NCBI RefSeq assembly: GCF_001194135.2
Contig: NC_068981.1
Coordinates: 9,300,391 to 9,361,812, forward strand
Source: Octopus bimaculoides
Taxonomy: Eukaryota
Reading direction: 5' to 3'
DNA length: 61,422 bases
Below are positions 30,750 to 57,384 of the stretch, piece by piece. Made by a program: the position numbers and the translations under genes. Every line of letters starts with the position of its first letter. Positions within the stretch are counted from its first letter, which is position 1. The notes below the pieces were generated by a model. It saw only the letters and a program-made list of their open reading frames with translations. It did not search any database and had not been told where the DNA came from.

Positions 30750-30845
30750 CCGCACAGGAAAAGGTGAAGATGATCAAGGAAATATATGATGGTGGAAGCT
30801 TCAGTGGTTCAGGAGTTTGGTGTTGATGAATCTACCATTCGTTCT
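30750..30845 (+). mobile_element. pogo/Tigger-like HTH_psq remnant
   Basis: EKVKMIKEI..GG / SVVQEFGVDESTIR across one frameshift. Confidence 0.5.
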
Positions 30846-32711: not shown

Positions 32712-32758
<47 letters not shown>

Positions 32759-33678: not shown

Positions 33679-33931
33679 CAGTGGCTCCCAACCTTTTCCA
33701 GGCTGCTACCCTCTTGGCACCAAGGCCACATTCCTAGTACCCCATCCCTCACCACTACCCCTACAAACATAGATCACTTTCTGCAGCAAATTCAAAACAG
33801 CTGTATCTCACAAATAAAACTTAACCTAATTAACTCTTTTTTTTTTTTTTTTTTTTTTTACACCCCATTATCACTCCACTTTTCTTCAAGGCCTCCAAGG
33901 GGGTAGTACCACCCACTTTAGAAACCATTTG
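33679..33931. mobile_element. hAT/Charlie-like MITE
   Basis: Starts cagtggctcccaacctttt and ends ccactttagaaaccatttg. 8-bp TSD ccctacag/ctctacag with one mismatch. Confidence 0.75.
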
Positions 33932-34921: not shown

Positions 34922-35797
34922 CGTAGTCTGATCAATAAGTATTTAGACTGTTGCTATAGTAATGAAGCTAAAGCATGGAGAGTGAAGCCTCTTGGCACAG
35001 ATTGACCTTAAACTCTGCTGTGCATGTGCACTAAGTTTTAACGTTCTAGCTAACTTCTGCTGTTTACAGCAGTGCTTGGAAGGAAGGTGTGTAGCATGTG
35101 ATTGTTGCATTGACTATGACAGAAGCTGAGCAGAGAATCTGCATCAAATTTTGCCAAAAGCTTGGTGATACCTGCTCAGAGGCCTATGCAAAGTTTTCAT
35201 AAAGTTTTCATTGTTCTCGATACAATCAAGGAGATCTTGTGCAACTGAAACCCAAGTGTCTGTTTGGCCAGCTGAAAACAGTTTTGGCACAAACTTGGCA
35301 GACACACGTCTCATAACCAAATCTTCAGTGTTAATGGACTGAACTGTAACTTATCCGATAATTCACGGATGGTGATTCGACAATTTCTCCTCACAGCTGC
35401 ATGCACATCTGTGATGTTTTACTCGGTTTTGCTGGCTGCAGGTCTCCCAGAATGTTCGTTAATATCAACATTTTTTTGGCCATTTTGGAAATGTCTGAAC
35501 TATCCATACACTAGTGTGTGGTTCATACACTCCTCTCCATACACTTTCTTCAACTTTGCATTGGCCTCTGAGCAGATATCACCATGACAACTTTCTCTGT
35601 TAGGATCAATACAATGATCACACACCACACATGTTCCTTCCAAGCATTACTGTAAACAGCGGAAGTGAGCTAGAATGTTAAAACTTAGTGCACATGCACA
35701 GCAGAGTTCAAGGTCAATCTGTGCCAAGCGGCTTTACTCTGTATGCTTTAGCTTCGTTACTATGGCAACAGTCTAGATACTTATTGATCAGACTTCG
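34922..35797. mobile_element. Mariner derivative with two inverted 5' ends
   Basis: TA-flanked, with inverted arms of >160 bp. Both arms reach into the transposase start (EQRICIKFCQKLGD..SEAYAK on +). The minus strand continues ..HSGRP..RITIREL..MRRVSAKFVPK. Confidence 0.85.
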
Positions 35798-36189
35798 TAA
35801 AGACTGCAGTTCAACCAACAGGTTCAAAACCTTATTGATGATGATCCTGGAAAATCAATGAGGGCAAGTTCCAAAGAACTTCACGTGTTGGAGAAATGTG
35901 CTGCACGAAGATAGTTGATGCAAGTTGTATGTACTGAGTAGAGGTCAATTAATGTCTGCAAAGACACCTGAAAACTGTTTGATCTGCTCTGAGCAGTTAT
36001 TTAGTAAATGAAAAACTCTCACAAGCATGGCATGCTTTGGTTCTTCTTTGATGAGAAAAACTTTGACTAAGAGGAGAAATAACAGATGGTTATGTGTAGA
36101 TCCTTGAGGTGTCCCTAGAGTGACGTGCACTAAATTTTCAGCAATTGTGATGGTTTTAAGAGTGGTGAGCAATGAAAATCATCATGCTA

Positions 36190-36620
36190 CTGTGGATTTT
36201 CCAGGGTTTTAGAATTAATGCTGATGGATATGTTGCAGCACTGCAGACAGTTGTTTAGCATTGGTTGGATGAAATATGCAGTGGAAGGGCATATGAGTTT
36301 CAACAAGATTCAGTACCTTCTCACAAAGTCCACATAATCCAATAATTAATATCAGACAATCTTAACAATCATGTAACACTCGACTTATGGGCTCCAAATT
36401 CATCAGATTAAAATCCCATGAACTACATTTGGAGCATTTTTGAAAGGGGAAATTAATTGACTTTCTCATAAAACAATAGCTTCATTGAAGGTTGCCATTG
36501 TCTGGGTGATATCTGAAATGAATAAAGACCATTCAGTGTAGGATGTCAATAATTCTGCATTGAAGCAGTGATTGAAGGTGGATTCATAAAACAGTTTTAT
36601 ATGAAAGTTTATTGAGATCA
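36190..36620 (+). mobile_element. Degenerate maT (DD37D) transposase fragment
   Basis: GFRINADGYV..GRAYEFQQDSVPSHK..LWAPNSSD.NPM.Y with stops. Confidence 0.65.
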
Positions 36621-39574: not shown

Positions 39575-40270
39575 TCCAGTGTAAGCTATGGACACATAAG
39601 AGGTGCAGCAGCATCAAAGGAAGATTAACCGGGAAGATAGCTTTCATGTGCGGCAGATGCACAGGGGCTATAAACACCACAGATGCTCAGAAAAGAGACT
39701 CCATCACATGCAAGGGGGAGAAACTAGAAGTAGTTGATAGCTTCCGCTACCTAGGTGACCAAGTTAGTAGTGGGGATGGATGTTCTGAGAGTGTTACTTC
39801 TAGAATAAGAATAGCCTGGGCAAAGTTCAGAAAGCTCCTACCCCTACTGGTGACAAAGAGCCTCTCACTCAGAGTGAAAGGTAGATTGTACTGCCATGCT
39901 TCATGACAGTGAAACATGGCCCCTGTGCTGGTGGCACGTAAAAAGCACCCACTACACTCTCGGAGTAGTTGGTGTTAGGAAGGGCATCCAGCTGTAGAAA
40001 CGCTGCCAGATCAGACTGGAGCCTGGTGCAACCTCTTGGCTTCCCAGACCCCGGTCGAACCGTCCATCCGTAGTAAGTGAAACATGGACCATGACTGCGG
40101 AGCACATGCATAGGCTCGAAAGAAATGAAGCTAGCATGATCCGCTGGATGTATAATGTCAGTGTGCATACATGACAGAATGTAAGCGCCCTGAGAGAATT
40201 GTTGGACATAAGAAGCATCAGATGTGGCATGCAAGAGAGACGTTTGTGTTGGTATGGTCACTTTGGTAAA
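39575..40270 (+). mobile_element. RTE RT fragment containing a 156-bp tail-less 3' UTR insert (39920-40075)
   Basis: RT translation on both sides. The insert is flanked by the direct repeat agtgaaacatgg (39908-39919, 40076-40087). Confidence 0.8.
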
Positions 40271-40702
40271 GGTCTTGTCATGGGAATGTGATAAATACCA
40301 AACAAAATGCATTTCAAGTGTGGTTGTCTTCTCAACTTTACTTTCATTCTCAAAGTTTAGGCATGATATAACAACAACTACGTCTCTAACATAGGGGTAG
40401 AGAAGACTGTTTTCAAACAAATAATCTATCTTCCAGTTTCATGTTGATGACTAAAATTAATTAGGATATTGCCATGGGTTTTTTATGTTGTTCAAAAATT
40501 ATTAGCCAATTACTGAAAGGTTAAGAAGATATAGACTTCTTTCCTTAATGAGTAAAAAACAAAATTGTCTTAATATCAGTTATATAATTAAAATCTGCAC
40601 CTTTGAAATCCTGTTTCTACAGAATTTTATTATTCTATGGATTTTCAAAAAACCCTGCAGAACTGAAGTCGTTTCATTAATATTTATTCAATAATATTTA
40701 CT

Positions 40703-41250
40703 TCATCATCATCATCATCGTTTAACGTCTGCTTTCCATGCTGGCATGGGTTGGACAGTTTGACTGAGGACTGATGAGCCATAAGGCTGCACCAGGCTCA
40801 ATCTGATCTGGCAAGGTTTCTACTGCTGGATGCCCCTCCTAACGCCAACCACTCTGAGAGTGTAGTGGGTGCTTTTACGTGTCACTGGCACGAGGGCCAG
40901 TCAAGCGGTTCTGGCAACACCCACGCTCAAAAGGTGTTTTTTTACGTGCTACCTGAATGGGAGCCAGTCCAGCAGCACTGGCAACGACCACACTCAAATA
41001 TTGTTTTTCATGTGCCATTAAAGCAATGATCACGCTCAAATAGTGCCTTTTACGTGCCACTGGCACGGGAGCCAATCAGCAGCCCTGGCAACGATCATGC
41101 TCGGATGGTGCTTTCAATGCTCCACTGGCACGAGTGCCAATCAGGCAGTACTGTCATCAGCCACGTCAGCGATTTTGATTTCACTTGCCTCAACAGGTCT
41201 TTGCAAGCAAAGTTTATTGTCCAATGAATGAAGGGGTACTCATAAGTGGG
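40703..41250 (-). mobile_element. RTE 3' UTR copy with ~5 repeat units
   Basis: Conserved tail and units; extends into the post-ORF region cttgcctcaacaggtctttgcaagc. Confidence 0.8.
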
Positions 41251-42217
41251 CTGGTTACGCTGTTATTATACTGATTTTAACACTATTTTTCAATAACCTC
41301 AATCTCTTGCTGATTAGAATAAATGTGATGAAATAAGATTATATTCGTCAAAATAAAATTAAATTTATAAAACCTAGAATTTCCATATAAATCAGATATT
41401 ATACAAGATAACCATATTTTGAATATCTGTTCCAGTTGAGTCTGCTATGTTACAAGCATTAAACTAGTTAGAGTTTTCAAACTTGGAACATATTTTCATT
41501 ATCTGTTTTGTAACTGGTTGTATATATTATATAGCAGCAGAATGTGATATTTAGAGAGTTAGTGTATACATTATTGACGTTAAAGAAAAGAATATGAAGA
41601 AAGTGATGTTGTGAATGTTTTTATTTGAAGTTTTTTTACTGTAACAACCATCACTTTTTGTTCATTGTGTCTGGAATGGCAAATTTAGTGGATAACATTT
41701 TCTTAAACCTTACTGAAACTGTCAGGGAGCTCCTAAATATCTATTTAACCTGGTTAATACAACAGCAAAATCCTTTTCTGTAATATTACTATCATCTAAT
41801 ATGATAAATGTAAAAAACTAATTTCTGTGTCTGTGTGTCACACTTTGACCCCACCCCTCTCTCACTAGTCAGTGACACTAAATGTGTGAGAGTAATAGTA
41901 GGCATAGAGATGGTGAGGGGATGGTAAAGACAGAGAGAAAGGAAGAGAGAGAGAGAGAGAGAGAAAGAGACAAAGAAATTTAGGGAGAGTAATGATGTTT
42001 TAGTAGTGTTGATGGTAGCAGTGGGAGTAATAAGACAGAGAGAGAGAAAGTGGGAGATGATTTACAACCTTGTTTAACCATATCTCTTTGACAGAAATTC
42101 CTGTGGCCAACATACTGAACACTATCATTTTCGTTTTATTTTTTGCTTTCTTTAATACACACACACACACACAAAATACACTTTAATTGAAATAAAGTTT
42201 CCCCAAAATTAAACATA

Positions 42218-42789
42218 TCTAATATAATAAATGTGAATGTCAGTGTGTCACACTTTTTCAACTTTAATAAATCCTTTCTACAGGAAGGAAGCACAAGGCC
42301 TCAAATTTTGGGGGAAGGGATTGTCAAAACTCAAAACCTAATGGCAGACAAAATACCTCTAAGCATTTTGCCTGGGATGCTAACAATTGTGCCAGCTCAC
42401 CGCCTTAATATAATGTAATAAATGTGAATGTCAGTGTGTCACACTTTTTCAACTTTACTCCTAGAGGCCGTAGATCACCATATCTTACCATTTTGGAATC
42501 AGGCTGACTCTGTGAGTAAATTAAAAACATTCCAGGCTGAATCCGGATCTGTAATCCTGAAATTTTGGATTCCTATGTTTTCATTACTGCGATTGTTTTC
42601 GGTGATTTTTTTTTGTTTTTTTTTTTGTTTTACATTACTTTTTGCGACGAATCTGATCCTCATTGGGATAGGACTCTGAAGGAAGCATTTGCAACAAATT
42701 CTCCAAAACAAGTCAGAGATCGGATCGCAGGTCTTCCCATTCGAGGTCAGTTGCTTAAAAGCTGTCGTATAGGGTGGCTTTTGAGCTAG
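42218..42789 (+). mobile_element. Non-autonomous Helitron with reiterated 5' end
   Basis: A|TCTAATATAATAAATG start, repeated at ~42410 and ~41795. RepHel remnant HWDRTLKEAFATNSPKQVR. Weak 3' hairpin aaaagctgtc..gggtggctttt followed by CTAG|T. Confidence 0.65.
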
Positions 42790-42889
42790 TTTCACATATT
42801 TTAAAATCTTCAGTTTTCAGACAGAAGAAGTGTGGGGAGGGAGAAGGCATCTACAAATGCTAATCAATAAAATACAAAGTAAATCTACA

Positions 42890-43440
42890 ATATGACATCA
42901 TATATTTGCTGCTGTATGACATCATGGTTTTGTCAGTAGAAGTCATTGTACAATTGCTGACAAAACACGTTCTATATTATTAGCTGGCATCAACAAACAG
43001 CATGTATTTGCTTGCATGAGGCATTTTATATTAGCAGAAATGAACAAACATTATGTATTGGATGGCACAAGACATTATATATTTGCCTACATCAAAGACA
43101 GCATATTTTCTGTGCTGAGACATCATATATTTGCTGTTACAAAACATCATATCGTTATTGTTACGAGAGATCAGTTATTGTGTGCCATGAGATGTCATAT
43201 ATTTCCTGTTAACAAACTACATATAGAACCTGCCATGAAACCTCATCTATTTGCTAGCACATTTACTTCTGTGATATCTCGTGCATTTACCAGCATCAGG
43301 CAGCTTCTGTTTCCTTACACAATACCTCACTTGTGTGCTGGCCTCAGGCATCATTTATCTGTTGCCTTGAGACATCATGTAATTGCTACCATTGGACATT
43401 ATATATTTACCAGCTTGAAACACAATGTCTTTGCTTATCC
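42890..43440. repeat. Degenerate 24-nt tandem repeat (~20 units)
   Basis: Consensus approximately (a/t)tgagacatcatatatttgctg(t/c)(t/c); ORF 43016-43516 shows 8-aa periodicity. Confidence 0.8.
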
Positions 43441-44748
43441 AACTTACTGGACCTGTGGACTGCTCATAAGCATTCAAGTTACTGTCTATATGTTGTATAT
43501 ATTCAAACAGAGCTGACTAAGTCTACTCAATATCAACCACTTAATGGATATATATATAATGTGTTATATACACTAAACAGCCTACAGCATGGAATACACA
43601 CACACATACACACACACACGGCTTTTTATTTATTTAGTATCACATGCAGGTTTTTTATGACACATTATAGTTTCTCACAGGGGAATCACTAAATTGACTT
43701 CCTCTCACACTCACCTGAGGGCACAAAACCTTACATTTCCAGGACTGGAGGAAATAGGGAGAACACAAGTGAAGGAGAAAATCTCTTATGTTGACTTGAA
43801 GCCAGTTTCCTGCCTCTTTTCCTCAAAAACTTCTGTTTTACAGTTTGATAGATCTTGTAGATTACAGCCTGCTTCTGCTCTTGTTGAGTAGACTGAGAAA
43901 ATTTATGTCAGAGTGGTAGTTACTTTCAATAATACTACATACATTTGCTACCCTTTCTTTATTTTCAGCAATGCTGTCTAGGAATTTCGTTCAGATGCTG
44001 ATTTTGTTGGACTTTTTCTCAATCAATACCTCACCATTTTCTAAGAAGTTCTTTTACCTGAATGGATCTTGTAATAATTATGAATTCATTACTTTTTCGT
44101 AACAAGTAGACTATATTTAATCATTGAGACATTTGTAGAATTGTCACAAATAAATTTGAATATTCAATGTATATTCTTTATGAATAACAATTTCTTCTGA
44201 TACATCATTTTGCTCCAAATTACAGTTGAGTTTTACATTTTACACACACAAACATGCGTGTATATCATTCACATGGTAGTGTGTGAATAATATTCTTAAG
44301 GTCAAATTTTGCTCACTTGCGGCCAATTTCACACTTTACCACTAATTCAGTTTCAGCTCAATCTTAATTCATTTTTTTTGCACTATGATGGACCCATTGG
44401 TAAGCTACATTTTCACATAAAATAATCGAAATTTGGTTCAGTAGAAAAAAAAATTATAATAAAAAGTGTAGGGCCAAAAATGGGGGAGTAACGCCTGATA
44501 TTTACTTTGATTCATAATTTCTTAGTTATTTGAAAAGCAAATTATGCTTTAATTATATATTTTAAAAAGACCTCAATGAGTCGAAGTTTTTTGGGGAAAA
44601 CCCCATTAAAAGATATTAGATAGAAAAACAAGTTATTGCAATTTTAAGTGATGAAAAAAAAAAAACGTGATAATTTGTTTCTAACTTTTACTCAATTTTA
44701 ATTTGTTTTTGCACTATGATGGGGCAGTGGTAAGCTATTGTGTGTGTA

Positions 44749-44787
<39 letters not shown>

Positions 44788-45083
44788 GATTGATGTTATT
44801 TGTGTGGCCCTAAGACTTTATTCTACTTGTTTTGTCCCTTGTCTGTTTACTCACGGTCTCGTCTTGAGCCCATCTTATGTTTTGGTCCCATTCCTGGCAT
44901 GTTTCTTGCTGGTGCCTCCAGAGTGGAAGCAATATTATCGATAATGGCCGAAATTGTGCTTTGACCCTCTGGCCGATAACTGAAGAGGAGTTGGTGACTT
45001 ATGTTTTCTGTTCGTCTGTATTTAGTATATATTCATATATTTATTTACTACATGTTTTTTTTAATTTGATATATATACATATA

Positions 45084-45906
45084 TAATCATCATCATCGAT
45101 TAATGTCCATTTTCCATGCACGCATGGGTTGGACGGTTTGACTGAGGTCTGGGGAGCCAGTGGCTGCACCAGGCTCCAATCTGATTTGGCAGAGTTTCTG
45201 CAGCTGGATGCCCTTTCTAATGCCAACCACTCCGAGAGTGTAGTGGGTGCTTTTTACATGCCACTGGCACAGGAGCCAGTACTGGCATCAGTCACGATCG
45301 GTTGGTGCTTTTTACGTGCCATTGGCACAGGAACCAGTCAGGTGGACCTAGTATCAACCATATTCGGTTGGTGCTTTTTATGTGCCATCGGCGTGGAAGC
45401 CAGCCAGGGGGCACTGGCTCCAGCTACGATATTGGTTTTACTTGACTCAACAGGTCTTCTCAGGCATATCATATTGCCTGACGCATCAGGAGTATTGTTA
45501 ACAGGGCTGGATGTACATGGCTGCGATCTCATTTTAGTTGCTGGGTCTTCTCAATCACAGCATATCACCAAAGGTCCCGGTCTCCTGTCATTGCCTCTGT
45601 CAGGCCCAATGTTCGTAGGTCATGCTTTACCATCTCATCCCATGTCTTCCTGGGTCTACCTCTTCCACAGGTTCCTTCTACAGTTAGGGAGTGGCACTTC
45701 CTCACACGGCTGTCTTCATTCATATCTAACACATGGCCATACCAGTGCAGTCGTCTCTCTTGCACACATTCAATGCTTCTTGTGCCCAACTTTCCCCTCA
45801 GAATACTTACACTCTGTCATGTTTGCACACTGACATCACGCATCCAGCAGATCATACTACCTACATTTCTTTCAAGCCTATGCATGTCCTCAGCATTCAT
45901 GGCCCA

Positions 45907-45910
<4 letters not shown>
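45084..45910 (-). mobile_element. 5'-truncated RTE LINE (ORF2 end + 3' UTR)
   Basis: QERRLHWYGHV..RGRPRKTWDEMVKHDLRTLGLTEAMTGDRDLW is contiguous with the repeat-bearing 3' UTR and tail, showing that the SINE-like copies are LINE 3' ends. Confidence 0.88.
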
Positions 45911-45966
<56 letters not shown>

Positions 45967-46214
45967 TAAAATAACGTTGACCACTAACGTGGACAATTAA
46001 TGTGCTAGAAATAGATCACATCTTGTGTCTATTAAGACCTAAATTGCTCTCAGCATGAAATATAGCAGTATACCAAAACGTAAGCAGGCAAGACATTTAA
46101 AATCACCTTAAAAAAACACTATTAAACAGGTACCGGTTTCGGATTTAACAAATCTTACCGATTGTCCATTCCTCTTCAGCCTGATTTGTAATGTAATATA
46201 TGATGTGAATTAGA

Positions 46215-46230
46215 ATACATTACTAATGAT

Positions 46231-46263
<33 letters not shown>

Positions 46264-46280
46264 GATCATTAGTAATGTAT
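46215..46280. repeat. Palindrome: perfect 18-bp inverted arms around (TA)14
   Basis: atacattactaatgatcc (46215-46232) and ggatcattagtaatgtat (46263-46280). Confidence 0.9.
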
Positions 46281-46299
46281 CCAACAGAAAAGATGTTTT

Positions 46300-46720
46300 T
46301 CTGTATGTCCTGTTAAACATGCTCAGTGATACACATTAACCGCTTATAGTGTTTTCCAGACCGGAGTACATGTTTATGCGCACACCCAAAGACAAAAATT
46401 ACTGTCAATGCTATTTGAAATTTTTACTCCACGTATCAATCTTATGATTCATACAATTTGGTTTGCTTTTGTGATATAAGACATCTGGAGATATTTATTG
46501 CATAGTATTCACTCTGTCAGATATTACGAATATGTGAATGGGTTAGTCCATGCTTTTGAAGCTCTATAGAGGCCACATGTACCCTGCAACCTCTCCCAAA
46601 ACATTCTTCTCCAAAATATCATGCAAGAGATCCCGAAGTTGCATATTAAATACTTTGTCAGTTAAATCTAGTCTGTCCTGGATAAAGTTTGTCTGTGATA
46701 CCGGTCGAGCAACCCCCCCA
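46300..46720 (-). mobile_element. Helitron Rep (HUH) domain remnant
   Basis: QDRLDLTDKVFNMQLRDLLHDILEKNVLGEVAGY then IELQKHGLTHSHI (46567-46529), matching the Helitron motif EFQKRGLPHAH. Confidence 0.8.
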
Positions 46721-48067
46721 ATTTAAAATTTTGATTCTATTTACCTTAAAGGGATCATAGTGAATTGATGAACATATGCAAATCGAAATCAGATATAGAC
46801 AAACATTAAAGTGAAAAGAATGTGTTTTACTTATGTTTACCTGAAATGAGTGTAAATAATAATTAAATGTAAATTAAATGAAGACCATTTTATGAGGAAC
46901 AAACATTAATATGTTTAATAATTATTGTTATAAAGCTTAATAAGGAGCTCAAATTTCATCCCTCCTCCCCGAATTTTAAATTTTGAACTTTTTCATCCAT
47001 TTATTTGTTTGTTTATTTATCCCTATCCATTTATTCATGTCTACATACATCTCTGCCTGTCTATATACATCTTTTTATATCCATATCTATATGCTTATTG
47101 AATTTAAAATTTTGAAAACATGGTTTCTTGCATATTTGGAATCTCTGTCATGGAAAAAAAAATATCAGAAAGGCCTGTTTGTGTGTGTGTGGGGGGGATG
47201 GGGGTGACTGTGCTAGGTCTGTCGCAGAGACGGTGAAATTTAAAAAAATTTAAATTTAGGAGAAGGAGGGGTTGAGGTGGGGATTTTAAATTTGAAAAAG
47301 GTCGTTTAAAAAAAAAAATTGGGAGTAGAGTGAAATTTGAAGTTTTTTTTTTTTTTTTTGCCTATTTGTAATCTCCAACATTTAAAATGTAGGAATCCGA
47401 AAAAATTTCTCTTAAAAAAAAATGTATTTTTCAAAGAGAGATGTGTTTCTGCATTAGCTCCAATTTTTCGATATAGGTAGGACAATGGGTTTTTTATGTT
47501 GAAGTTGATCTGATGTGCATTTCATCCACGAAACCCTAGGTTGCTGTTTTTCACAAGGGTTTTTGTGGTTTCTTTACATTATGTGTCTATCTGTAGCAAT
47601 TGCAACTTCGAAGATATTTATTAGCCATTCAAGGAAAACAAAAAGATCGTTAGATTCACTACAACATTTAATTTTCAAAGACAACTGCAGCATGGAAGAT
47701 GCTTGTAAGCCATTTAAGAACACACAAAAAAATGTAGAAGTGAATCTATCGTTTTATTGTGTGTTCTCAAATGGCTTACAATTATTTCGCACGCTGCAAT
47801 TGTTTTTGTTTCCGCACACAATCTCAGATCAAGTCACTTGCTATGCAAGTACATTTTTGTAATTTAATTTTCACTTATGTCAGAATTTTCGTTGCTTGAC
47901 CGGTAAAAAAATTTTTTGTATATTATATATTATATGTATATATTGTATATGTATGTATATCATATATATTATATGTATATATTATATATATGTATTATAT
48001 ATGTTATAAGTATGTATTATATATTATTTATATACTATGTATGTATTATACATATACTATAAGCAAC

Positions 48068-49435
48068 ATTTGAGTGCGATCGTTTCCAGCTTTGCCTTAC
48101 TGGCACTTGTGCTGGTGGCATGTGAACAAAACATTGGACTGACTCCTGTGCAGGTGGCACATAAAAAACACCATTTGAGCGTGGCTGTTGCCAGTACTGC
48201 TGGACTGGCACATATGTGGCAGATGTTCAGGAGCAATAAACACTGAAAATGTGCAGAGAGCAACTTCTGCCACATTCCAGGGAGAAAAACTAGAAGTAGT
48301 TGATAGGTTCCGTTACTTAGGTGACCAAGTCAGTAGCGGGGGAGGGTGCGCTGAAAGTGTAGCTACTAGAATAATAGCCTGGGCAAAGTTCAGAGAGCAC
48401 CTACCTCTGCTGGTGACAAAGGACCTCTTGCTCAGAGTAAAAGGTAGGCTGTATGACGCATGTGTGCGAACAGCCATGCTACATGGCAGTGAAACATGGG
48501 CCTTGACTGCTGAGAACATGTGTAAGCTCACAAGGAATGAAGCCAGTATGCTCCGATGGATGTATAATGTCAGTGTGCATACCCGACACAGTGTGAGTAT
48601 CTTGAGAGAAAAGTTAGACCTAAGAAGCATCAGTTGTGGTGTGCAAGAGAGACGATTGCACTGGTATGGTCATGTGGCAAGAATGGATGAGGATAGCTGT
48701 GTGAAAAAGTGCCACAGCCTAGCAGTTGAGGGTACCTGTGGAAGAGGTAGACCCAGGAAGACCTTGGATTAGGTGGTGAGGCACGACCTTCAAACATTAG
48801 GCCTTACCGAGGCAATGACTAGTGACCGAGACCTTTGGAAATATGCAGTGCGTGAGAAGACCCAGCAAGACAAGTGAGACCATAACCTGTGGCCTTGACC
48901 AGGGGTGTAGCCAGCCCACTAACGCATACTTTTCCTTCTTTGGACACAAAACCCTGCTTGCGAAGGCCTGTTGAGGCAAGTGAAATCGAAACTGAACCAA
49001 ATTTGATGACATCACCTGTGCCAGTGGGGCGCTAACAGCACCATCAAAGTGGGATCACTGCCAGAGGAGCGGTCTTGCTCCCATGCCGGTGGCACGTGAA
49101 AAGCACTATTTGAGTGCGATCATTTCCAGCTTCACCTTACTGGCACTTGTGCCGGTGGTGTGTGAACAAAACATTGGACTGACTCCTGTGCAGGTGGCAC
49201 GTAAAAAACACCATTTGAGCGTGGCTGTTGCCAGTACCGCCAGACTGGCCCTCGTGCTGGTGGCACATAAAAAGTACCCACTACACTCTTGGAGTGGTTG
49301 GCATTAGGAAGGGCATCCAGCTGTAGAAACTCTGCCTGATCAGATTGGAGTGTGGTGTAGACATCCGCTTCGCCAGTCCCCAGTCAAATCGTCCAATCCA
49401 TGCTAGCATGGAAAGCGGACGTTAAATGATGACGA
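48068..49435 (+). mobile_element. 5'-truncated RTE LINE with a copy of its own 3' UTR segment at the 5' junction
   Basis: ORF 48188-48772 is the RT C-terminus; the 3' UTR and tail run to ~49435. 48068-48209 is a direct repeat of 49108-49249. Confidence 0.88.
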
Positions 49436-49469
49436 TATATGTATATATATATAGACATACATATTGTGT

Positions 49470-49870
49470 ACTCTTTACTCTTTTACTTGTTTCAGTCATT
49501 TGACTGTGGCCATGCTAGAGCACCGCCTTTAGTCAAGCAAATCAACCCCAGGACTTATTCTTTAGATGCCTAGTACTTATTCTATCAGGCTCTTTTGCCG
49601 AACCGCTAAGTTACGGGGACCTAAACACGCCACCATTGGTTGTCAAGCGATGTTGGGGGGGACACAGACACACACATACATATAATCCGTCTACTAAATC
49701 CACTCAAGGCTTTGGTCGGCCCGAGGCTATAGTAGAAGACACTTGTCCAAGGTGCCATGCAGTGGGAATGAACCTGGAACTATGTGGTTCGTAAGCAAGC
49801 TACTTACCANNNNNNNNNNATGAACCTGGAACTATGTGGTTCGTAAGCAAGCTACTTACCACACAGCCAC
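49470..49870 (-). mobile_element. tRNA-derived SINE, full length
   Basis: tRNA-like head near 49870, internal (TG)n and tail gcatggccacagtcaaatgactgaaacaagtaaaagagtaaagag; contains a 10-N gap. Confidence 0.82.
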
Positions 49871-49924
49871 TCCTGTGCCTATATATGTTATATCTATTAT
49901 ATATCTATATATATAGTATCTATC

Positions 49925-49958
<34 letters not shown>

Positions 49959-50164
49959 TATCATCATCATGGGTTGGACGACTTGACTGAGGACTGGTGA
50001 AACCGGATGGCAACACCAGGCTCCAATCTAAATTTGGCAGAGTTTCTACAGCTGGATGCCCTTCCTAACGCCAACCACTCAGAGACATATATATAATATA
50101 TACATTATGTATATATATGTAATATATACACACATTATAAATGTAATATATACATACATTATAT

Positions 50165-50550
50165 ATAACCTGATTAACCATGTGAGTGAATAAGCTGTAT
50201 CTCATTGTGCCTGATATTTTAATCATCTTGGCAGTGACATCTGATGACATCTCAGTCATCATATCCTTAATTGCCCTAACTATTATACTGTTATCAACTC
50301 TGATGGCTGGTCCCTCAATTGGTTTGATATTTGCAAGACTCACTCTCTCTACCAATTATTCTCCCCATTCAATAACCTTCCGTAATGGCACCTCCATGCA
50401 TCTTTCTTCTCCGAGTTGCTAAATGCAAGCTTATACCCATTTGAACATTTTTCCCCTACCACATTGCGATTCTCTCTGATACACTGCTTTGCTATTCTGA
50501 ACACCTCACACTAGAATATTGTCAAACTGCTTACTTTCTGCTATTCCTTT
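50165..50550 (-). mobile_element. RTE ORF2 fragment
   Basis: SLANIKPIEGPAIRVDNSIIVRAIKDM..TAKMIKISG..MVNQV; preceded by a short young 3' end (49958-50085). Confidence 0.75.
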
Positions 50551-51959
50551 TGCTACGAAAGTGTTAAAAACAGCATCCATCTTGCCCACTCACTGAAAAT
50601 TTTGTGTTGGAAACAGTTAAAATGTTTTCTGTTTCCATCTCATCAATTGTGCTTTTAACAAAATTAGTCAACACTTAACTCGATCTGTTGTGAAACAAAA
50701 AAAAAAAAANNNNNNNNNNAAAAAAAAAAAAAAAGAAAAAAAGAACAAAACACACACCGTACTCAATAACTTTTTTTAAATTCTTTTAAATATGACAACA
50801 CAGTTCTTAGTTCCAAAAATTTCAGCGAAAATACAATTTTTACTTCACAAAATGAAAGACTAACTTTAAAACAATTGCTCGATATCCAAAAGCATCCAAT
50901 CAGAATCGACGTGGTTTGTGTACAAAACCACAAAATTGAATCTCTAAATACAGCTGTATTCCCATAGGTTTCACTCCTGATTTAGTTTTGAGTTACACTC
51001 TATTTTAAAGGAGTAATGAGGTAAAGATGTGAACAGATTAACTTGGTTAGTTTGAATAAATGATTTCATCATTTCCAATACTACAACTCATAGAACATGT
51101 ACTGCAGGCCTGAAGACAAATTGTATCTCATTAAAGAGAAGCTCTTAACAATATGTTGTGATGGTCATGACTCTTATACTGTTGCAGTTAAAGCTACTCC
51201 ACCATAAAAACACTTTCATTGTTGTTTTAATTTGATATATTGTCCTCTTATTATAATGTCATCACAAGTTTGACATCTGGTCTCACTTGTAGCACTTATA
51301 CACTCATAGCTAAGTATTTCTCTTGTTTTTAATTGCCTTATTCATTCAAACTCATCTATTCTCTAAAATAATTCTTGTTTGTTCTGCCCCTGCTATGACT
51401 AACCTTGTTTCTTGGCTACATGTATATACATATTTCGTACTTTTCTTAAAAATAATTCTTTCTTGTTTACTCTACCCCTTAAAATGGCTTTTTCGTGTCC
51501 GTGGTTGCACCCACCCTTTCCCACCAATACCAGAAATCTCTTTCTCTTACCAGACATCCAGTTGCCCTTCCCCTGTCATATTGGTAATCTTGCCACCCTC
51601 TCCTTTCTCTCCCCCATCTCTGGACTAACTAAACCAGATAGCAGCCCACTTACCCCCGCTCTCTTTTTTTTATATTTATATCTGCAGCATCATTAATGCT
51701 TACGCCCACAAGACTCATAACGCTTATATTTATAATGCCCCAAACACTTTCATATACAATGCTTCCTTACCCCCCCCCCCCNNNNNNNNNNNNNNNNNNN
51801 NNNNNNNNCAGTAGAGGCAACAACCTTAACAATTCTAACATGTTTGAATGACGGTAGGTTAAAAGCAAGAACAACTATTATGACATCTGTTACCAAACAA
51901 TCACAGGAACCTTCGTTTCAGGTGCTGAATAACATCTCTCCTTCCTGTGTTACCTCCCA

Positions 51960-54900
51960 TATCTCTTTCCCAGTTTTCAGAGTTGGCACTGTAAATGTAG
52001 GCACATTGAGATTGTAGAGATGCTTGAATGGAGATGTGTTGATGTATGTTGCATACAAGAGGTAAGGTGGAGAAGAGCTTCAGCCAGTTCTTACAGGCAA
52101 AGCACACAGGTATAAACTCTTCTAGGAGGTAATAGTGATGGAATAAGGTGGGTGGGCAGACTACTTGCAGAGAAATGGGTGGATAAGGTCATAGGGGTAG
52201 TGAGAGTGTGCGATAGATATAATTAAACTAAGGCTAGTCTTGCAGAATGGTATAGCTATAATTATCTTTGCCTACACCCCACAAGCGGGCTTACCAAATG
52301 AACAGAAGGATTACTTTTAAGATGTTCTTCTGCAGGCTACCTCAAAGACAAGTGACAATGATCTCATCTTTGTGGTTGGAGATTTTAATGGGCATGTCAG
52401 ACAGCAACCTGGTATTTTCCATGGAGTTGGTACCAGAAATGAAGAGGGAACTAGGCTCCTGGAGTTCTGTGATGCAAATAACCTATTAATCTGCAACACT
52501 AACTTCTGGAAGCCAGCTAGCCACCTGATAACCTATCAATCAGGAAACTCTGCTAGCCAGATTGATTTCATTCTCACCAGACAGGGGGATACATGGTTGC
52601 TCTTAAATACAAAGACCCTCCTTGGTGAAGAATGTACCCCCCCAGCATAGGCTAGTCATTAGTAACTTCAGACTTGAGGCCAGAAAGATGCCAAAAAGCA
52701 GACCAATCTGGAAAAGGACTTGGAAGCTTAAGAACCCTTCACATGGTCAGAGATTTAAGGATATCCTTACCGAGATATTTGATGATAGGGAGGAGGAGCT
52801 ACAGTCATGTGACATAGAAAGCAGCTGGGAATTCCTGCGAGACAGCTTGCTGAGTGCCACAGACCAAATCTGTGGCTGGTGCAAAGCCCCTTCCAGACCT
52901 AGGGTAAAATGGTGGCGGAACAATACTGTAGACAGGGCCATTAGAGCAAAGAAACAGGCTTGGAAGAGTAGGGGTAGCAGGAGAATGTATCAGACAGCCA
53001 AAAGGGAAGCTAAGAGACAGGTATATATAGTCAAGGGAGTAGTAGAAAAGAAGTTTGGTCTTCACATCACTGAACATTGGCAAAGAATTGAAGTATTTCG
53101 GATTGCAAGACAGTGTGTGAGAGAAAATTGTGATGTCATAGGAGAGAAATGTATCTGCATGGATTGGTGCCCCTGCGTTTAATGATTCTGCAAAGAAAGA
53201 GGCTTGGAGATGCCATTATGAAGGACTGCTGAATGTGGAGAATGAATGAGAGGAGGAGAGCTTGCCAAATGTTGACCCAGTTGAGGGACCACCTACCCGA
53301 ATCGACAGTACCCTGGTAGATAAAGCAATTAAGGATATGAAGACAGAGAAAGCACCTGGCCCATCAGGAATCACTGCTGAGATGCTTGAAATATCGGGCA
53401 GTGTGGGTTATGATATTGTCACCTGCATCGAAAATCAGGTTGTACATGAAGGAGTCATACCCAATGGCGTAGCAGCACCATAGTCAACAGCAGCAAGGGT
53501 AAAGGTGATGCTTTAGATAGAAATAAATATAGGGGTATCAAATTATTGGATCGGGTAATGAAAGTTACAGAGAGGGTCATAGCTCAACTAATTAGGGAGA
53601 GAATTAGCCTAGATGAGTTGCAGTTCAGTTTTGTGCCAGGCAGAAGCACTACTGATGCTATATTTCTGGTAAGGCAACTGCAGGTTAAATATCTAGTCAA
53701 AGATAAACCTTTGTACTTGGCTTCTGTTGACTAGGGAAAAGTCCTCGACAGGGTCCCCCAATCCCTCCTCCCAATGCAGATAGACGAGTGGTTGGTAAGA
53801 GCTGTACAAGTCCTGTAAAAGGATGCTGTCAGTAAGGTGAGAGTTGGCAACGAGTATAGTGAAGAATTCTGATAGAAGTGGGGGTTCTACAAGGATCAGT
53901 CCTCAGCCCCCTCTTCTTCCAGGCAATAACAGGAATTCAAGACAGGCTGCACCTGGGAGCTTCTCTATACTGATGACCTTGCTCTAATACCTGGGTCACT
54001 GCCAGAACTAGATGAAGTTTAAGGTGTGGAAGCAAGGCCTAAAATTGAAGGGCCTTAGGGTTAACCTAGCAAAAACCAAAGTCTTAGTGAGTAGGAAGGC
54101 TGTCAAATCATAAACCCCTTCAGGTAGATGGCACTGCTCAATCTGTAGAAGAGGTGTAGGTAGAAATTCCATAAGACGTATCCAGTGTAAGCTATGAACA
54201 CATAAGTGGTGCAGCTACATCAAGGGAAGATAGTTTTCATGTGGAGCAGATGCACAGTGCCAATAAACACCATCGATGCTCAGAAAACAGACTCCATCAC
54301 ATGCCAGGGAGAGAAACTAGAAGTAGTTAATAGCTTCCGCTACCTAGACGACCAAGTTTGTAGTGGGGGTGGATGCTCAGAGAGTGTTACTACTAGAATA
54401 AGAATAGCCTGGGCAAAGTTCAGGGAGCTCTTACCACTGCTGGCAACTAAAGGCCTCTCGCTCTGGATGAAAGGTAGACTAATATGCATGTGTGAACTGC
54501 CATGCTACATGGCAGAGAAACATAGGCTGTCACTGCTGAGGACATGCGTAGGCTTGAAAGAAATGAAGCTAGTATGATCCGCTGGATGTGTAATGTCAGT
54601 GTGCATATATGACAGTGTAAGCACCCCGAGAGAAAAGTTGGGGATAAGAAGCATCAAATGTGGTGTGCAAGAGATGACTGCATTGGTATGGTCACGTGTT
54701 ATGTATGAATGAAGACAGCTGTGTGAGGAAGTGCCACTCCCTAACTGTAGAAGAGGTAGACCCAGGAAGACATGGAATGAGGTGGTGAAGCATGACCTTC
54801 GAACATTAGGTCTCACAGAGGCAATGACTAGTGACAGAGATCTTTGGAGATATGCTGTGATTGAGAAGACCTGGCAACTGAGATCGCAGCCACGCTTATC

Positions 54901-55310
54901 TGGCCCAGTTAAGAGAACTCCTGATGCTTCAGATGATATGATATGCTTGAGAAGACCTATTGAGTCAAAACCAATTTTGTAGCTGTGGCCAGTGCCTCGA
55001 CTGTCTCTCATACTGGTGGCATGTAAAAAGCATCATCCAAACATGGCCAATGCCAGTACCCCTCTGACTGGCTCTCATGCCGGTGGCACGTAAAAAAACA
55101 CCATTTGAACATAATTGATACCAGGCCCGCCTGACTGGCTCCTGTGCCGGTGGCATGTAAAAAGCACTTGGCGTTAAAAAGGGCATCCAGCTGTAGAAAC
55201 TTTGCCAGATCAGATTGGAGCCTGGTACAGCCGTTTGCTCTCCAGACCTCAGTCAAACCATCCAACCCATGCCAGCATGGAAAATGGATGTTAAACGATG
55301 ATGATGATCA
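51960..55310 (+). mobile_element. Near-full-length degenerate RTE-clade LINE (APE + RT with Cys-rich insert + 3' UTR)
   Basis: APE motifs (VGDFNGHV, RNEEGTRLLEFC, QIDFIL), RT motifs (QFSFVPGRSTTDAIF, QGSVLSPL, LLYTDDL), a CxxC insert, C-terminal RGRPRKTW, the repeat-bearing 3' UTR and a (GAT)n tail; many frameshifts and stops. Confidence 0.93.
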
Positions 55311-56838
55311 TCATGACTTTGTACCGACCGCCTACTGTCACTGCAATCATTAAATAATGCCATTCAAGCTGGTAAATCTCTTTCTAGGAGTTTACTGATC
55401 CTCAATGGCCATGTCTCTTGCATTACTAACTTCTCCCTAACAAAAAATAAAGAAACCTTTTATGTACTGCAGTAGAAATACTTGTACCAACTTAGTTTTT
55501 TAATACCAAAATATCAAACCAATATCGAAGGCTCGGCTATCTCCATTCAGCTATTTTTCTGGGGTTAAAATTGTTTAGGTGAGTTTCAACTTATAAACAG
55601 AAGGTCGTTAAAGATGTTTATTGTTGAGTATTTGTTGGTTTGAAGGTGAAATAATTTACATTCACAGAATGGGATCATGTTGATGTATTCAGTTCATCTT
55701 TGAAAACCTAATACAGTCCAGATCATCTTCATTTAACATTTGTTTCCCATGCTGGCATTGCTTGGATGGTTTAACTGAAAACTGGCAGCTGCGGAACTGC
55801 ACCAGGTTCCAATCTGATTTCGCATGGTTTCTATGGTTGGATGCTCTTCCTAATGCCAACCACTCCAAGAGTGCATGTGCCACTGGCATGGGTGTCAGTT
55901 ATGTAACACCAGCACTGGCTACAACTATGATCTCAATTGGCTTGACAGGTCGTCTCAAGAACGGTATATTGCCGAAGGCCTCAGCTACTTGTCACTACCT
56001 CTGTGAGGCCCAACATTCAAAGGGTGCCAGTTACACGATGCTGGCATCGGTCACGACTGATTTCACTTGGCTTGACAGGTCTTCTCAAGGATGGCATATC
56101 ACCCAAACCATGGTACCTGTTGATATCTTCTTTGTCTCTAGATACATTGACAATATCACAGTTAACAAACAGTGATTGTCTTAAAATAAAAGACAGAGGA
56201 CACAATAACAACATCCAGACGATACAACAAAACAGTTTTCTTCTTAATGTCCACATTACTAAATACCAGTCTTTTCAGATATAAAAATATTACTCCTTCG
56301 TGGGGTATTTTTTTCTTTTTTCAAGAGAATTAACTGAAACTCCAGATGAAATATTGTTTGCTTTAAAGAAAGAGAATAGAGTGGAATTACTCAACAACAG
56401 TAACTTCTAACTGGCTTTGGTTGATAATTCAATCTATTCTGTGAATATGTGACATACTCCATCTTCAAGTGTTATGGAATATATAATGTAAAATTCCGAG
56501 GTTTTCTCTCCGGTGTACCAAGAAATTTTACTAGTGATTGCAGTTATGAGATATGTAAAGTGAATTTAATGTGTAATTGCTTGGAGTATGCAAATTCTAG
56601 GTAGAGATTTTTTTAAAAACCTGTCTATAGTAACTTTTTCTTTCAGCAAATTATGTGAAATAACTGTAAAACCAAAAACATTAATAACAGGATTTACAGA
56701 TAAAACAAATTTTAGTCTTTTAGAATATGATCAAAATCATTAGAGTGAGAAATATTAAGTATATTTGGATGATTGACTTTTGAGATTATTAACAAAACTT
56801 GTAACTGATTTTATCTTCTCTTGTTTTGTCCATTTCAG

Positions 56839-57384
56839 GTTCAAGAATTCATTGATATGATTCCAGAAGGTGGTGGCATCATGTGTCATGATTTTATCTT
56901 ACAACTTTGGAAATGTCTGCTGGATGATTGGTTTGGAGTTGGTGCCACTGTTTATATTGTGACACCACAGATTGACCCGGAACGCGTGTTCAGCATATAT
57001 TTACTAATGATAAGGAATAAAGGAACTGGCTTTAATGTAACTCTGTTGACACCAGAGAAAGGGCCAGATCGTTTCAGTAAAGTTCTGGATATAGCCAAGC
57101 AGTTGATGAAAAAGACTCGAACATCAAGACATACCTTGCTTGTATCTGATGTAAAACGCGAGTGGGTTACTAACAAATTAACAATTCGCCATGAAGAATT
57201 CTCCACTAATTTCATAGCTGCCTACAAAGACCACGAAGCAGAAGTGTTGACAACAACTGCTTATTTCCACAAAAGTCATTTTAACTTTAACCTGAAAGAT
57301 ACAGTCACATATAATAAGTTACCAACATCTGAATTACGACGTAACTATCTTCTTCCTTTAGGGTTTGGAGAGAGAAATTTTTGA
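56839..57384 (+). CDS. Uncharacterised protein, last coding exon (181 aa + stop), degenerate PLD/Nuc-like domain
   Basis: Acceptor ttgttttgtccatttcAG (56837-56838), phase 0 matching the 24904 donor. The joined read is ...HLDKNLDE|VQEFIDMIPEGG..., and the frame stays open to TGA at 57382-57384. PLD-like pattern VYIVTPQID...VTLLT...FSTNFIA..D...EVLTTTAYF. Confidence 0.82.
   Translation, partial: VQEFIDMIPEGGGIMCHDFILQLWKCLLDDWFGVGATVYIVTPQIDPERVFSIYLLMIRNKGTGFNVTLLTPEKGPDRFSKVLDIAKQLMKKTRTSRHTLLVSDVKREWVTNKLTIRHEEFSTNFIAAYKDHEAEVLTTTAYFHKSHFNFNLKDTVTYNKLPTSELRRNYLLPLGFGERNF

What the first reader, a model, noticed from the sequence alone, without database searches (positions are those of the whole stretch)
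56839..57384. Orphan gene encodes a candidate catalytically dead PLD/Nuc-fold (pseudo-nuclease) domain
Seen: an intact 181-aa exon joined in phase to a 133-aa exon, with no stops or frameshifts although all surrounding TE ORFs are decayed. Established: PLD-superfamily nucleases (Nuc, Zucchini/PLD6, BfiI, DISARM DrmC) have the pattern [beta]xIxSP(F/Y)I...VxLLT...HxK(x4)D(x6-8)G(S/T)xN(F/L). Inference: here ATVYIVTPQID...FNVTLLT...FSTNFIAAYKDHEAEVLTTTAYF (motif at 57199-57282) keeps the hydrophobic scaffold but has H->S, K->N and N->Y at the catalytic positions. A conserved single-domain PLD pseudo-enzyme could act as a nucleic-acid or lipid binding adaptor, or a regulatory partner of an active PLD/Zuc-type nuclease (small-RNA or innate defence role). 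I recognise no named gene.
Basis: partly seen in the sequence, partly recalled or inferred. Interest (0 to 1): 0.75.

Follow-up and report, generated by a model that had tools for sequence, protein, structure and literature searches.

The report
Conserved mollusc PLD-fold pseudo-nuclease gene
This is a real two-exon octopus gene, conserved across molluscs, whose protein keeps the shape of a phospholipase-D-type nuclease but has lost the residues that do the cutting, so it most likely works by binding rather than by cleaving.

Summary
Exon 1 (24506-24904) and exon 2 (56839-57384) have canonical GT/AG sites and join in phase 0. The 314-aa product is identical to NCBI's "uncharacterized protein LOC106874202" of Octopus bimaculoides. 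A contiguous transcript contig from another cephalopod spans the same junction. Argonauta hians has the same two exons, and dN/dS against it is 0.03.

The gene is not an orphan. Full-length orthologues at 55-62% identity occur in gastropods and bivalves, and more distant relatives occur in brachiopods, nemerteans and annelids. None has a name or a Pfam hit.

- AlphaFold2 plus Foldseek returns almost only PLD-superfamily folds, though with weak E-values.
- Relatives and their consensus hit Pfam PLDc_2 and RE_NgoFVII just below threshold.
- 21 of 84 relatives carry an intact F-H-x-K...T-S-A-N-F motif at the exact columns where the mollusc group has F-S-T-N...T-T-A-H/Y-F.

The H->S, K->N and N->Y mapping is therefore correct, and the loss predates the split of the mollusc classes sampled (cephalopods, gastropods, bivalves).

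It resembles the substrate-binding TBP-like domains of RnlA and RNase H3, but not significantly.

The function is inferred: a non-catalytic, probably nucleic-acid-binding, PLD-fold protein. It is an undescribed family of a known kind and of moderate interest.

The parts
24506..24904 (+). Coding exon 1 (aa 1-133), from the start ATG to the donor GACGAG|GTAAGT
   Evidence: 100% match to the NCBI 314-aa model. (aligned to a cephalopod transcript contig and to Argonauta exon 1).
24506..24838 (+). N-terminal alpha+beta domain (aa 1-111), order a-b-b-a-b-b-b-b-a, with the family-wide motif V-T-x-K-x-N-x-x-[ST]-G-x-[LM]-x-[IV]-x-G-K-x-H-x-x-W-F. Possibly a TBP-like fold.
   Evidence: AF2 pLDDT 92.7, pTM 0.85. 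Foldseek best hits are BamC, RnlA TBP1/TBP2 and the RNase H3 N-domain, all with E>0.01. The domain is shared with the ~390-aa paralogues.
24905..56838 (+). Single intron of 31.9 kb (GT...AG), filled with TE fragments and assembly gaps
   Evidence: Argonauta has an intron at the same codon position.
56839..57384 (+). Coding exon 2 (aa 134-314 plus the TGA stop at 57382-57384)
56887..57381 (+). PLD-like alpha/beta domain (aa 150-314). Helix 151-166 then strand 170-174 ('ATVYIVTPQID') form the usual PLD N-terminal helix-strand unit.
   Evidence: AF2, Foldseek PDB, sub-threshold Pfam PLD-clan hits in relatives, translation.
57199..57282 (+). Degenerate HKD-type motif FSTNFIAAYKDHEAEVLTTTAYFHKSHF. 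S255 (57202-57204) replaces His. N257 (57208-57210) replaces Lys. T272-T273-A274-Y275 (57253-57264) replaces T-S-A-N. H277, K278 and H280 (57268-57279) are invariant in the 23-sequence full-length alignment A1 (one short Logan fragment each has D or N at H277).
   Evidence: translation. (column-by-column alignment with HxK-intact relatives).

Best explanation
LOC106874202 is a functional two-exon gene under strong constraint. Its 314-aa cytosolic or nuclear protein has two domains.

- The N-terminal alpha+beta domain (aa 1-111) is possibly of the TBP-like type that positions nucleic-acid substrates in RnlA and RNase H3.
- A short flexible linker follows.
- The C-terminal domain (aa ~150-314) is a single PLD-superfamily domain of the Nuc/NgoFVII/PLDc_2 type.

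The protein belongs to an unnamed family found so far only in Spiralia. The family's ancestral state carried a working HxK...(T/G)SxN phosphodiesterase motif.

In the common ancestor of the mollusc classes sampled (cephalopods, gastropods, bivalves), this orthologue changed His->Ser, Lys->Asn, Ser->Thr and Asn->His (Tyr in cephalopods). It has kept those replacements essentially unchanged since. Without the nucleophilic His and its Lys partner it cannot use the PLD phospho-histidine mechanism.

It therefore most likely acts as a pseudo-enzyme. It would retain the phosphate-binding pocket, and probably the homodimer typical of single-HKD proteins, to bind a phosphodiester ligand without cleaving it. 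Nucleic acid is the most likely ligand.

Shown: gene structure, conservation and constraint, fold class, and residue mapping. Inferred: loss of activity, dimerisation, the ligand, and the biological role.
For: Gene model: canonical splice sites, phase 0, and identity to the NCBI model. A contiguous cephalopod transcript contig spans the junction. Argonauta has the same exon structure.

Constraint: dN/dS is 0.03 in both exons. Identity to gastropods and bivalves is 55-62% over the full length, with 83 invariant columns.

Fold: AF2 gives pLDDT 78 and pTM 0.78, and the C-domain is mostly 81-93. The Foldseek PDB list is dominated by at least nine different PLD-superfamily protein families. The BFVD list includes a PLD phosphodiesterase, a NucT-like nuclease and a PPK C1 domain.

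Sequence link: PLDc_2, RE_NgoFVII and Tyr-DNA_phospho are the only Pfam families hit by more than two of 46 family members (9, 6 and 4 members). The HxK-subfamily consensus hits PLDc_2 at 5.4e-5 and RE_NgoFVII at 2.2e-4, covering nearly the whole domain models. Two relatives have precomputed PF13091 hits, and UniRef names one 'Phospholipase D-like domain...'.

Motif: 21 of 84 aligned C-domains have H, K and N at the columns where all but two of the 31 mollusc orthologue sequences aligned have S, N and H/Y (the exceptions: one T for S; one low-quality fragment, P0030, with F). The NJ tree puts those mollusc sequences in one clade, with HxK-bearing sequences outside it.

N-domain: very confident model. 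RnlA TBP domains and the RNase H3 N-domain bound to an RNA/DNA duplex are among the Foldseek hits. RnlA_toxin and DUF3378 appear among weak Pfam hits. In those enzymes TBP-like domains bind substrate (PMC8266594).
Against: - No Foldseek hit reaches E<1e-3, and TM-scores are low (0.2-0.3 normalised to the full-length query).
- The octopus protein itself has no Pfam, NCBIfam, PADLOC or PDB sequence hit.
- The profile of the family against PDB sequences finds nothing.
- The N-domain assignment is statistically inconclusive. The best hit is BamC at 3e-2, and the two TBP-type Pfam hits are singletons at E~0.1.
- The loop holding the invariant H277-K278-x-H280 is modelled with pLDDT below 50, so the pocket geometry is unknown.
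- Invariance of the replacement residues could also mean a new chemistry rather than pure binding.
- No expression, binding or activity data exist for any member.
Confidence: 0.6

Rival explanations
1. The protein is still an enzyme. The active site has been rewired: the invariant H277/K278/H280 in the loop just after the old GSxN position, together with S255/T256/N257, would carry out a phosphoryl- or other transfer reaction.
For: S255, T256, N257, T272, T273, H277, K278 and H280 are invariant or nearly so across cephalopods, gastropods and bivalves. Scaffolding pseudo-enzymes often relax at former catalytic positions, and this one does not. K278 is specific to the mollusc clade and a few neighbours.
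Against: H277 and H280 (F-H-x-x-H-F) are also conserved in relatives that keep HxK, so they are not a replacement set. H275 is Tyr in the three cephalopod sequences sampled. To my knowledge no PLD-superfamily enzyme works without the HxK histidine. The loop is poorly modelled.
Confidence: 0.12
2. The PLD-like domain is a membrane or lipid-binding module, as in MITD1, and the protein is a membrane adaptor unrelated to nucleic acids.
For: The MITD1 C-domain is among the top structural matches (4a5z, 2ymb). The MITD1 PLD fold binds membranes without catalysis (PMC11962514 citing Hadders et al. 2012).
Against: The nearest sequence-level neighbours are nuclease-type single-HKD domains (PLDc_2, RE_NgoFVII, TDP1), not lipid PLDs. 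The N-domain resembles substrate-binding domains of RNases rather than a MIT domain. Reading the sequence shows no amphipathic or TM segment.
Confidence: 0.13
3. It is a regulatory subunit that forms a heterodimer with an HxK-intact paralogue and poisons or tunes its composite active site.
For: Single-HKD PLD proteins build one active site from two protomers (established for Nuc, Zucchini and BfiI; my own knowledge). Bivalves and gastropods have both the pseudo-enzyme and paralogues, some of them HxK-intact. For example, Potamilus has P0007 and P0199, and Haliotis has P0004 and P0056.
Against: No paralogue from a cephalopod appeared among named hits in three searches, yet the cephalopod gene is under dN/dS 0.03. 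The Haliotis and Babylonia paralogues have themselves lost the His. The absence is not conclusive, because the searches are word-indexed or unnamed.
Confidence: 0.1
4. The PLD resemblance is spurious. The domain has another alpha/beta fold, and the motif alignment is coincidental.
For: All Foldseek E-values are above 1e-3. All Pfam hits are below the gathering thresholds. There is no PDB sequence hit.
Against: Three independent kinds of evidence converge on the same superfamily. The extended motif (helix-strand 'IxxxP', HxK strand, hairpin, (T/G)SxNF, then N-x-E/D before the next strand) matches in order and spacing.
Confidence: 0.05

Closest known systems
Single-HKD PLD-superfamily nucleases (Pfam PLDc_2 PF13091, RE_NgoFVII PF09565): Nuc, Zucchini/PLD6, BfiI, NgoFVII, SauUSI nuclease domain
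   Same: One PLD-type alpha/beta domain of about 165 aa. Family relatives carry HxK...(T/G)SxNF...NxE in the same order. These are the best Pfam near-hits, and the structures are in the Foldseek list.
   Different: The octopus and other mollusc orthologue lacks His, Lys and Asn. The whole family lacks the (x4)D spacing and scores below the Pfam thresholds. It has an N-terminal alpha+beta domain rather than a TM anchor (Zucchini), a B3-like DNA-binding domain (BfiI) or a helicase (SauUSI). It has been found only in Spiralia.
PLD-fold pseudo-enzymes: MITD1 C-domain, FAM83 DUF1669 (e.g. FAM83B, 4urj), PLD5
   Same: PLD fold retained, catalytic residues lost, and function by binding (membrane for MITD1; CK1 for FAM83, from my own knowledge). 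Both are among the top structural matches.
   Different: No sequence similarity to either. The partner domain is different: it is neither a MIT domain nor a long disordered tail. The replacement residues are themselves invariant. Close relatives with an intact motif still exist, which gives a dated loss event.
TBP-like substrate-binding domains of RnlA/LsoA (TBP1/TBP2) and of RNase H3 (DUF3378)
   Same: About 100-aa alpha+beta unit placed N-terminal to a nuclease-type domain. A strand-turn-strand '[ST]-G-x-L-x-I-x-G' is followed by a long helix. These domains appear in the Foldseek hits (6y2p, 6y2r, 7aex, 4py5) and as weak Pfam hits.
   Different: The similarity is not statistically significant (E 0.04-0.4), and BamC scores slightly better. 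The catalytic partner domain here is PLD-type, not HEPN or RNase H.

Membership tests
PLD superfamily (Pfam clan of PLDc, PLDc_2, RE_NgoFVII, Tyr-DNA_phospho, PPK C-domains) | PLD-type alpha/beta sandwich fold | tested here: met
   The AF2 model retrieves at least nine distinct PLD-superfamily protein families as its top PDB matches, with probabilities of 0.7-0.98 but E-values of 0.01-0.2. BFVD adds a PLD phosphodiesterase, a NucT-like nuclease and a PPK C1 domain. The hits are consistent but individually weak.
PLD superfamily | Sequence match to a curated PLD model above its gathering score | tested here: not met
   The octopus protein has no Pfam hit at E<=10. The best relatives and the subfamily consensus reach 22.9-23.5 bits against PLDc_2 (cut-off 27) and 21 bits against RE_NgoFVII (cut-off 23.8). 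Two relatives have precomputed PF13091 hits.
PLD superfamily | Catalytic HxK...GSxN (HKD) motif | tested here: not met
   Octopus has S255-T-N257...T272-T-A-Y275. The motif is intact (H, K, N) in 21 of 84 aligned family members. The family therefore qualifies, but this protein is a degenerate member.
PLD superfamily | Phosphodiesterase activity via a phospho-histidine intermediate | not testable with these tools
   Requires a biochemical assay. Absence is predicted from the lack of the His.
Single-HKD nucleases (Nuc/Zucchini/BfiI type) | Homodimer that builds one active site from two HKD motifs | not tested
Zucchini/PLD6 | N-terminal mitochondrial transmembrane anchor plus an intact HKD motif | tested here: not met
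   The N-terminus is hydrophilic (MSSKKERR...) and folds as a globular domain. The HKD motif is lost.
MITD1 | N-terminal MIT three-helix bundle followed by a PLD-like domain | tested here: not met
   The N-domain is alpha+beta with six strands. There is no MIT Pfam hit.
FAM83 (DUF1669) | Match to DUF1669 at the N-terminus | tested here: not met
   No Pfam hit. The PLD-like domain is C-terminal. The only similarity is structural, to 4urj.
TBP-like domain of RNase H3 (DUF3378) / RnlA N-terminal domains | TBP-like half-barrel fold with significant structural or profile similarity | tested here: inconclusive
   Foldseek: RnlA 6y2p at E 0.04, 7aex with rmsd 4.0 over 80 columns, RNase H3 4py5 with rmsd 3.7 over 77 columns at rank 40; BamC scores better. 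Pfam RnlA_toxin 0.068 and DUF3378 0.12 each hit one of 25 members. The profile against PDB sequences finds nothing.

The most novel reading that the evidence does not exclude
The unnamed spiralian family (TBP-like substrate-recognition domain plus single-HKD PLD nuclease) is an animal nucleic-acid-targeting defence or surveillance system. It has diversified in bivalves and gastropods, with repeated loss of catalysis. The mollusc-wide S-T-N form, which includes the octopus gene, would be an ancient, essential nucleic-acid sensor or inhibitor derived from it. That would be a lophotrochozoan counterpart of the way vertebrates use PLD3/4 or Zucchini, arrived at independently.
Probability: 0.12. 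Interest if true: 0.65.

Novelty: new variant of a known kind. Interest (0 to 1): 0.42.

Why it matters
The result gives a fold, a family and a dated loss of catalysis to a gene annotated only as 'uncharacterized'. The gene is under very strong constraint (dN/dS 0.03) across an entire phylum.

It defines an undescribed spiralian branch of the PLD superfamily that has its own partner domain. Active-looking and dead members sit side by side in this branch. That makes a natural series for studying how phosphodiesterases turn into binding proteins, with straightforward reversion experiments (S255H, N257K, Y275N).

If the N-domain does bind nucleic acid, the family becomes a candidate for mollusc-specific RNA/DNA surveillance.

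The finding does not overturn anything. PLD pseudo-enzymes are already known (MITD1, FAM83, PLD5), so the interest is moderate.

Tried and rejected
- Direct searches with the octopus protein found nothing useful: Pfam, NCBIfam and PADLOC, PDB by sequence and PDB with the orthologue profile.
- The only 'hit' was the cardiac troponin C N-lobe (E 0.005) over aa 104-173. I considered an EF-hand-like helix-loop-helix around PEGGGIM and rejected it. The loop lacks the Ca-ligand positions, it is G-A/C-V/I-x-x-G in the wider family, the aligned second helix is the first helix of the PLD domain, and AF2 confidence there is low.
- The profile of 46 diverse C-domains and the subfamily consensus gave only noise against PDB sequences (CERT PH domain, RRF).
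- The N-domain profile against PDB sequences gave one designed protein at E 0.58.
- dN/dS against the more distant cephalopod transcript failed because dS is saturated, so Argonauta was used instead.
- The UTRs of the foreign transcript and the Argonauta flanks align to the window only through repeats. I therefore obtained no UTR exon or synteny information.
- A literature search for the locus name found nothing.
- A horizontal or viral origin was considered. HMMER scored the family profile against all 1.84 billion representative proteins and listed 108 hits at E<=1e-3. BFVD matches are weak.

Full report
**1. What is in the sequence**

The region 56839-57384 is open for 181 codons and ends in TGA. 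It follows a polypyrimidine tract and a canonical acceptor (ccatttcag|GTTCAAG).

The proposed upstream exon runs from an ATG at 24506 to 24904 (133 codons) and ends at a consensus donor, GACGAG|GTAAGT. Both exons are whole numbers of codons, so the junction is phase 0.

The conceptual 314-aa product is 100% identical, end to end, to NCBI 'uncharacterized protein LOC106874202 [Octopus bimaculoides]'.

The rest of the window is repeat-rich and contains assembly gaps. Its longer open frames are fragments of mariner-type transposase, DDE_3 and reverse transcriptase.

**2. Is the gene real and constrained**

- Twenty-three full-length homologues align colinearly with no gap at the exon junction.
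- Two independent 1.9-kb Logan contigs (SRR27666068 and SRR27666076) from another cephalopod encode the orthologue (86% identity) as one uninterrupted 945-nt frame. Against the window they split into two blocks that meet at 24904/56839. I read this as cross-species transcript support for the junction.
- The Argonauta hians orthologue has the same two coding exons, the same phase-0 junction (GACGAA|GTAAGT ... TTTCAG|GTGCAA) and a 41-kb intron.
- Octopus against Argonauta gives dN 0.03, dS about 1.0 and omega 0.03, alike in both exons. Substitutions fall 16/6/116 over codon positions 1, 2 and 3.
- Against the more distant cephalopod dS is saturated, with positions at 44/21/174.

The gene is therefore under very strong purifying selection.

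**3. Not an orphan**

Orthologues of 310-322 aa at 55-62% identity occur in gastropods (Haliotis, Patella, Littorina, Lymnaea, Elysia, Candidula, Lottia) and in bivalves (Potamilus and many transcriptome contigs).

HMMER scored the orthologue profile against every one of 1.84 billion representative proteins and found 108 relatives. They include:
- full-length but more distant proteins from the nemertean Tubulanus and the brachiopod Lingula;
- a paralogous group of about 370-405 aa in annelids (Owenia), bivalves and gastropods;
- many proteins of about 170-230 aa that contain only the C-domain.

Every source name is 'uncharacterized' or 'hypothetical'. The exception is one UniRef label, 'Phospholipase D-like domain...', for a scallop paralogue.

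**4. The fold of the C-terminal half**

The AlphaFold2 model built on the orthologue alignment has pLDDT 78 and pTM 0.78. The C-domain (aa 150-314) is mostly 81-93 per ten-residue block. The exception is the loop 274-285.

Its element order is helix, strand, helix, strand, helix, helix, three consecutive strands, the low-confidence loop, a further strand, then a final helix.

Foldseek against the PDB gives no match below E 1e-3. The top of the list is nonetheless almost entirely PLD-superfamily: TrmBL2 C-domain, polyphosphate kinase 1, MITD1, Streptomyces PLD, FAM83B, the SauUSI nuclease domain, vaccinia F13, human PLD2 and BfiI. Probabilities are 0.7-0.98. The viral library adds a PLD phosphodiesterase, a NucT-like nuclease and a PPK C1 domain.

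At the sequence level the octopus protein hits nothing. Among 46 diverse family C-domains, however, the only Pfam families hit by more than two members are PLDc_2 (9 members), RE_NgoFVII (6) and Tyr-DNA_phospho (4). All three are PLD-clan models.

The consensus of the HxK-bearing subfamily reaches 23.5 bits against PLDc_2 (cut-off 27) and 21 bits against RE_NgoFVII (cut-off 23.8). The alignments cover most of each model.

I regard superfamily membership of the family as well supported, though still below curated thresholds.

**5. The catalytic motif**

I aligned 84 C-domains. The family consensus is:

F-H-x-K-F-I-(8-9 residues)-A-E-V-L-V-T-S-A-N-F-H-x-x-H-F-(3)-N-x-[ED]

This is the HxK strand, the hairpin, the (G/T)SxN turn and the downstream N-x-E of PLD enzymes.

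Twenty-one sequences have H, K and N all present.

The mollusc orthologue sequences, octopus included, read:

F-S-T-N-F-I-A-A-Y-K-D-x-E-A-E-V-L-T-T-T-A-[H/Y]-F-H-K-S-H-F

A neighbour-joining tree places the S-x-N sequences in one clade. Its successive outgroups are Lingula (N-x-R), Tubulanus (N-x-N), two H-x-N sequences, and then H-x-K sequences. The loss therefore predates the divergence of cephalopods, gastropods and bivalves. The other main clade shows several further independent losses.

- The family never had the (x4)D spacing.
- H277 and H280, just after the motif, are family-wide features, so they are not new substitutes for the lost His.

**6. The N-terminal half**

Residues 1-111 form a very confidently predicted alpha+beta domain (pLDDT 92.7, pTM 0.85). 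The ~390-aa paralogues share it, with a conserved V-T-x-x-V-x-x-x-[ST]-G-T-L-x-I-x-G-x5-W-F element.

Foldseek finds nothing significant. The best matches are BamC, the two TBP-like domains of RnlA, and, lower in the list, the N-domain of RNase H3 in complex with an RNA/DNA duplex and phosphoglucomutase C-domains.

Pfam RnlA_toxin and DUF3378 each appear once among the noise-level hits of 25 N-domains.

In RnlA and RNase H3 these TBP-like domains bind and position the substrate (PMC8266594, read).

I treat 'TBP-like nucleic-acid-binding domain' as the leading but unproven reading.

**7. Mechanism**

PLD enzymes need the motif histidine as nucleophile, with the lysine beside it (established for the superfamily). 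A protein with Ser and Asn at those positions cannot use that chemistry.

The replacement residues and the neighbouring polar residues are invariant or nearly so across the mollusc sequences sampled (T256, T272, T273, H277, K278, H280, D287; a few short fragments differ). This argues that the pocket is still used. My inference is that it binds a phosphate-bearing ligand.

Several features favour nucleic acid over lipid: the nuclease-type affinities of the domain, the RNase-like partner domain, and the absence of any hydrophobic anchor.

I therefore propose a dimeric, non-cleaving, nucleic-acid-binding pseudo-nuclease, with overall confidence of about 0.6. Confidence is high for 'PLD-fold, catalytic residues lost' and much lower for the ligand.

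The rivals are:
- a rewired active enzyme;
- a MITD1-like membrane binder (PMC11962514);
- a heterodimeric regulator of an active paralogue;
- a spurious fold call.

The heterodimer idea is weakened because no cephalopod paralogue appeared in any search. That absence is not conclusive.

**8. Comparison and novelty**

Functionally the closest analogues are the PLD-fold pseudo-enzymes MITD1 and FAM83. By descent the closest are the single-HKD nucleases of the PLDc_2/NgoFVII type.

The protein is a degenerate member of the PLD superfamily, but of no named family. It fails the motif test and the curated-score test, and it has a different partner domain from each named relative.

No paper mentions the locus.

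I classify it as a new variant of a known kind: an undescribed spiralian PLD family with a distinctive architecture and an ancient, well-dated catalytic loss. Interest is moderate (0.42). The prediction is sound and testable, but pseudo-PLDs are not new, and the biological role is unknown.

Noticed in passing
window 9067-9651, 16900-17520(-), 20347-20742, 39869-40420(-), 45129-45833, 55762-56175: The same short peptide-like stretch (…LQSDLAEFLQLDALPNANHSESVVGAF…) recurs in open frames on both strands at six or more places. This is evidently one dispersed repeat family (SINE/MITE-like). Its copies also account for the only blastn matches between the window flanks and the Argonauta locus.
   Followed up: partly
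window 18713-19189 (+), 1361-1726 (+), 11236-11835 (-): Decayed transposable-element fragments: the C-terminal part of a mariner-type transposase (Pfam Transposase_1, E 1.7e-15), a DDE_3 fragment (E 0.005) and an RVT_1 fragment (E 6e-5). The LINE-like frames at 19304-19810 (upstream of the gene) and at 48188-48772, 52622-53182 and 54206-54577 (inside its intron) have no Pfam hit.
   Followed up: partly
window 12642-12664, 16998-17366, 22224-23141, 26308-26477, 51782-51808 and three 10-nt runs: Runs of N (assembly gaps). Five of the eight lie inside the 31.9-kb intron, so the true intron length and content are uncertain.
   Followed up: no
aa 104-173 of the protein (window 24815-24904 and 56839-56958): There is a weak sequence match to the N-lobe EF-hand pair of cardiac troponin C (E 0.005), centred on the invariant PEGGGIM loop. 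I judge it spurious, but the GGG loop is invariant in molluscs and modelled with low confidence, so its role is unexplained.
   Followed up: partly
L003 58973-62121 (-) (Argonauta hians BAAFZT010000003.1): The gene downstream of the Argonauta orthologue, on the opposite strand, is a RAF-type kinase (RBD, C1_1, Pkinase). The octopus window ends about 4 kb after the stop codon, and no matching coding sequence was detected there.
   Followed up: partly
related proteins P0007/P0199 (Potamilus), P0004/P0056 (Haliotis): Individual bivalve and gastropod genomes carry both the S-T-N orthologue and a ~390-aa paralogue. Many paralogues have independently lost His or Lys (Q-x-K, D-x-K, S-x-S and others), so catalytic decay recurs in this family.
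   Followed up: partly
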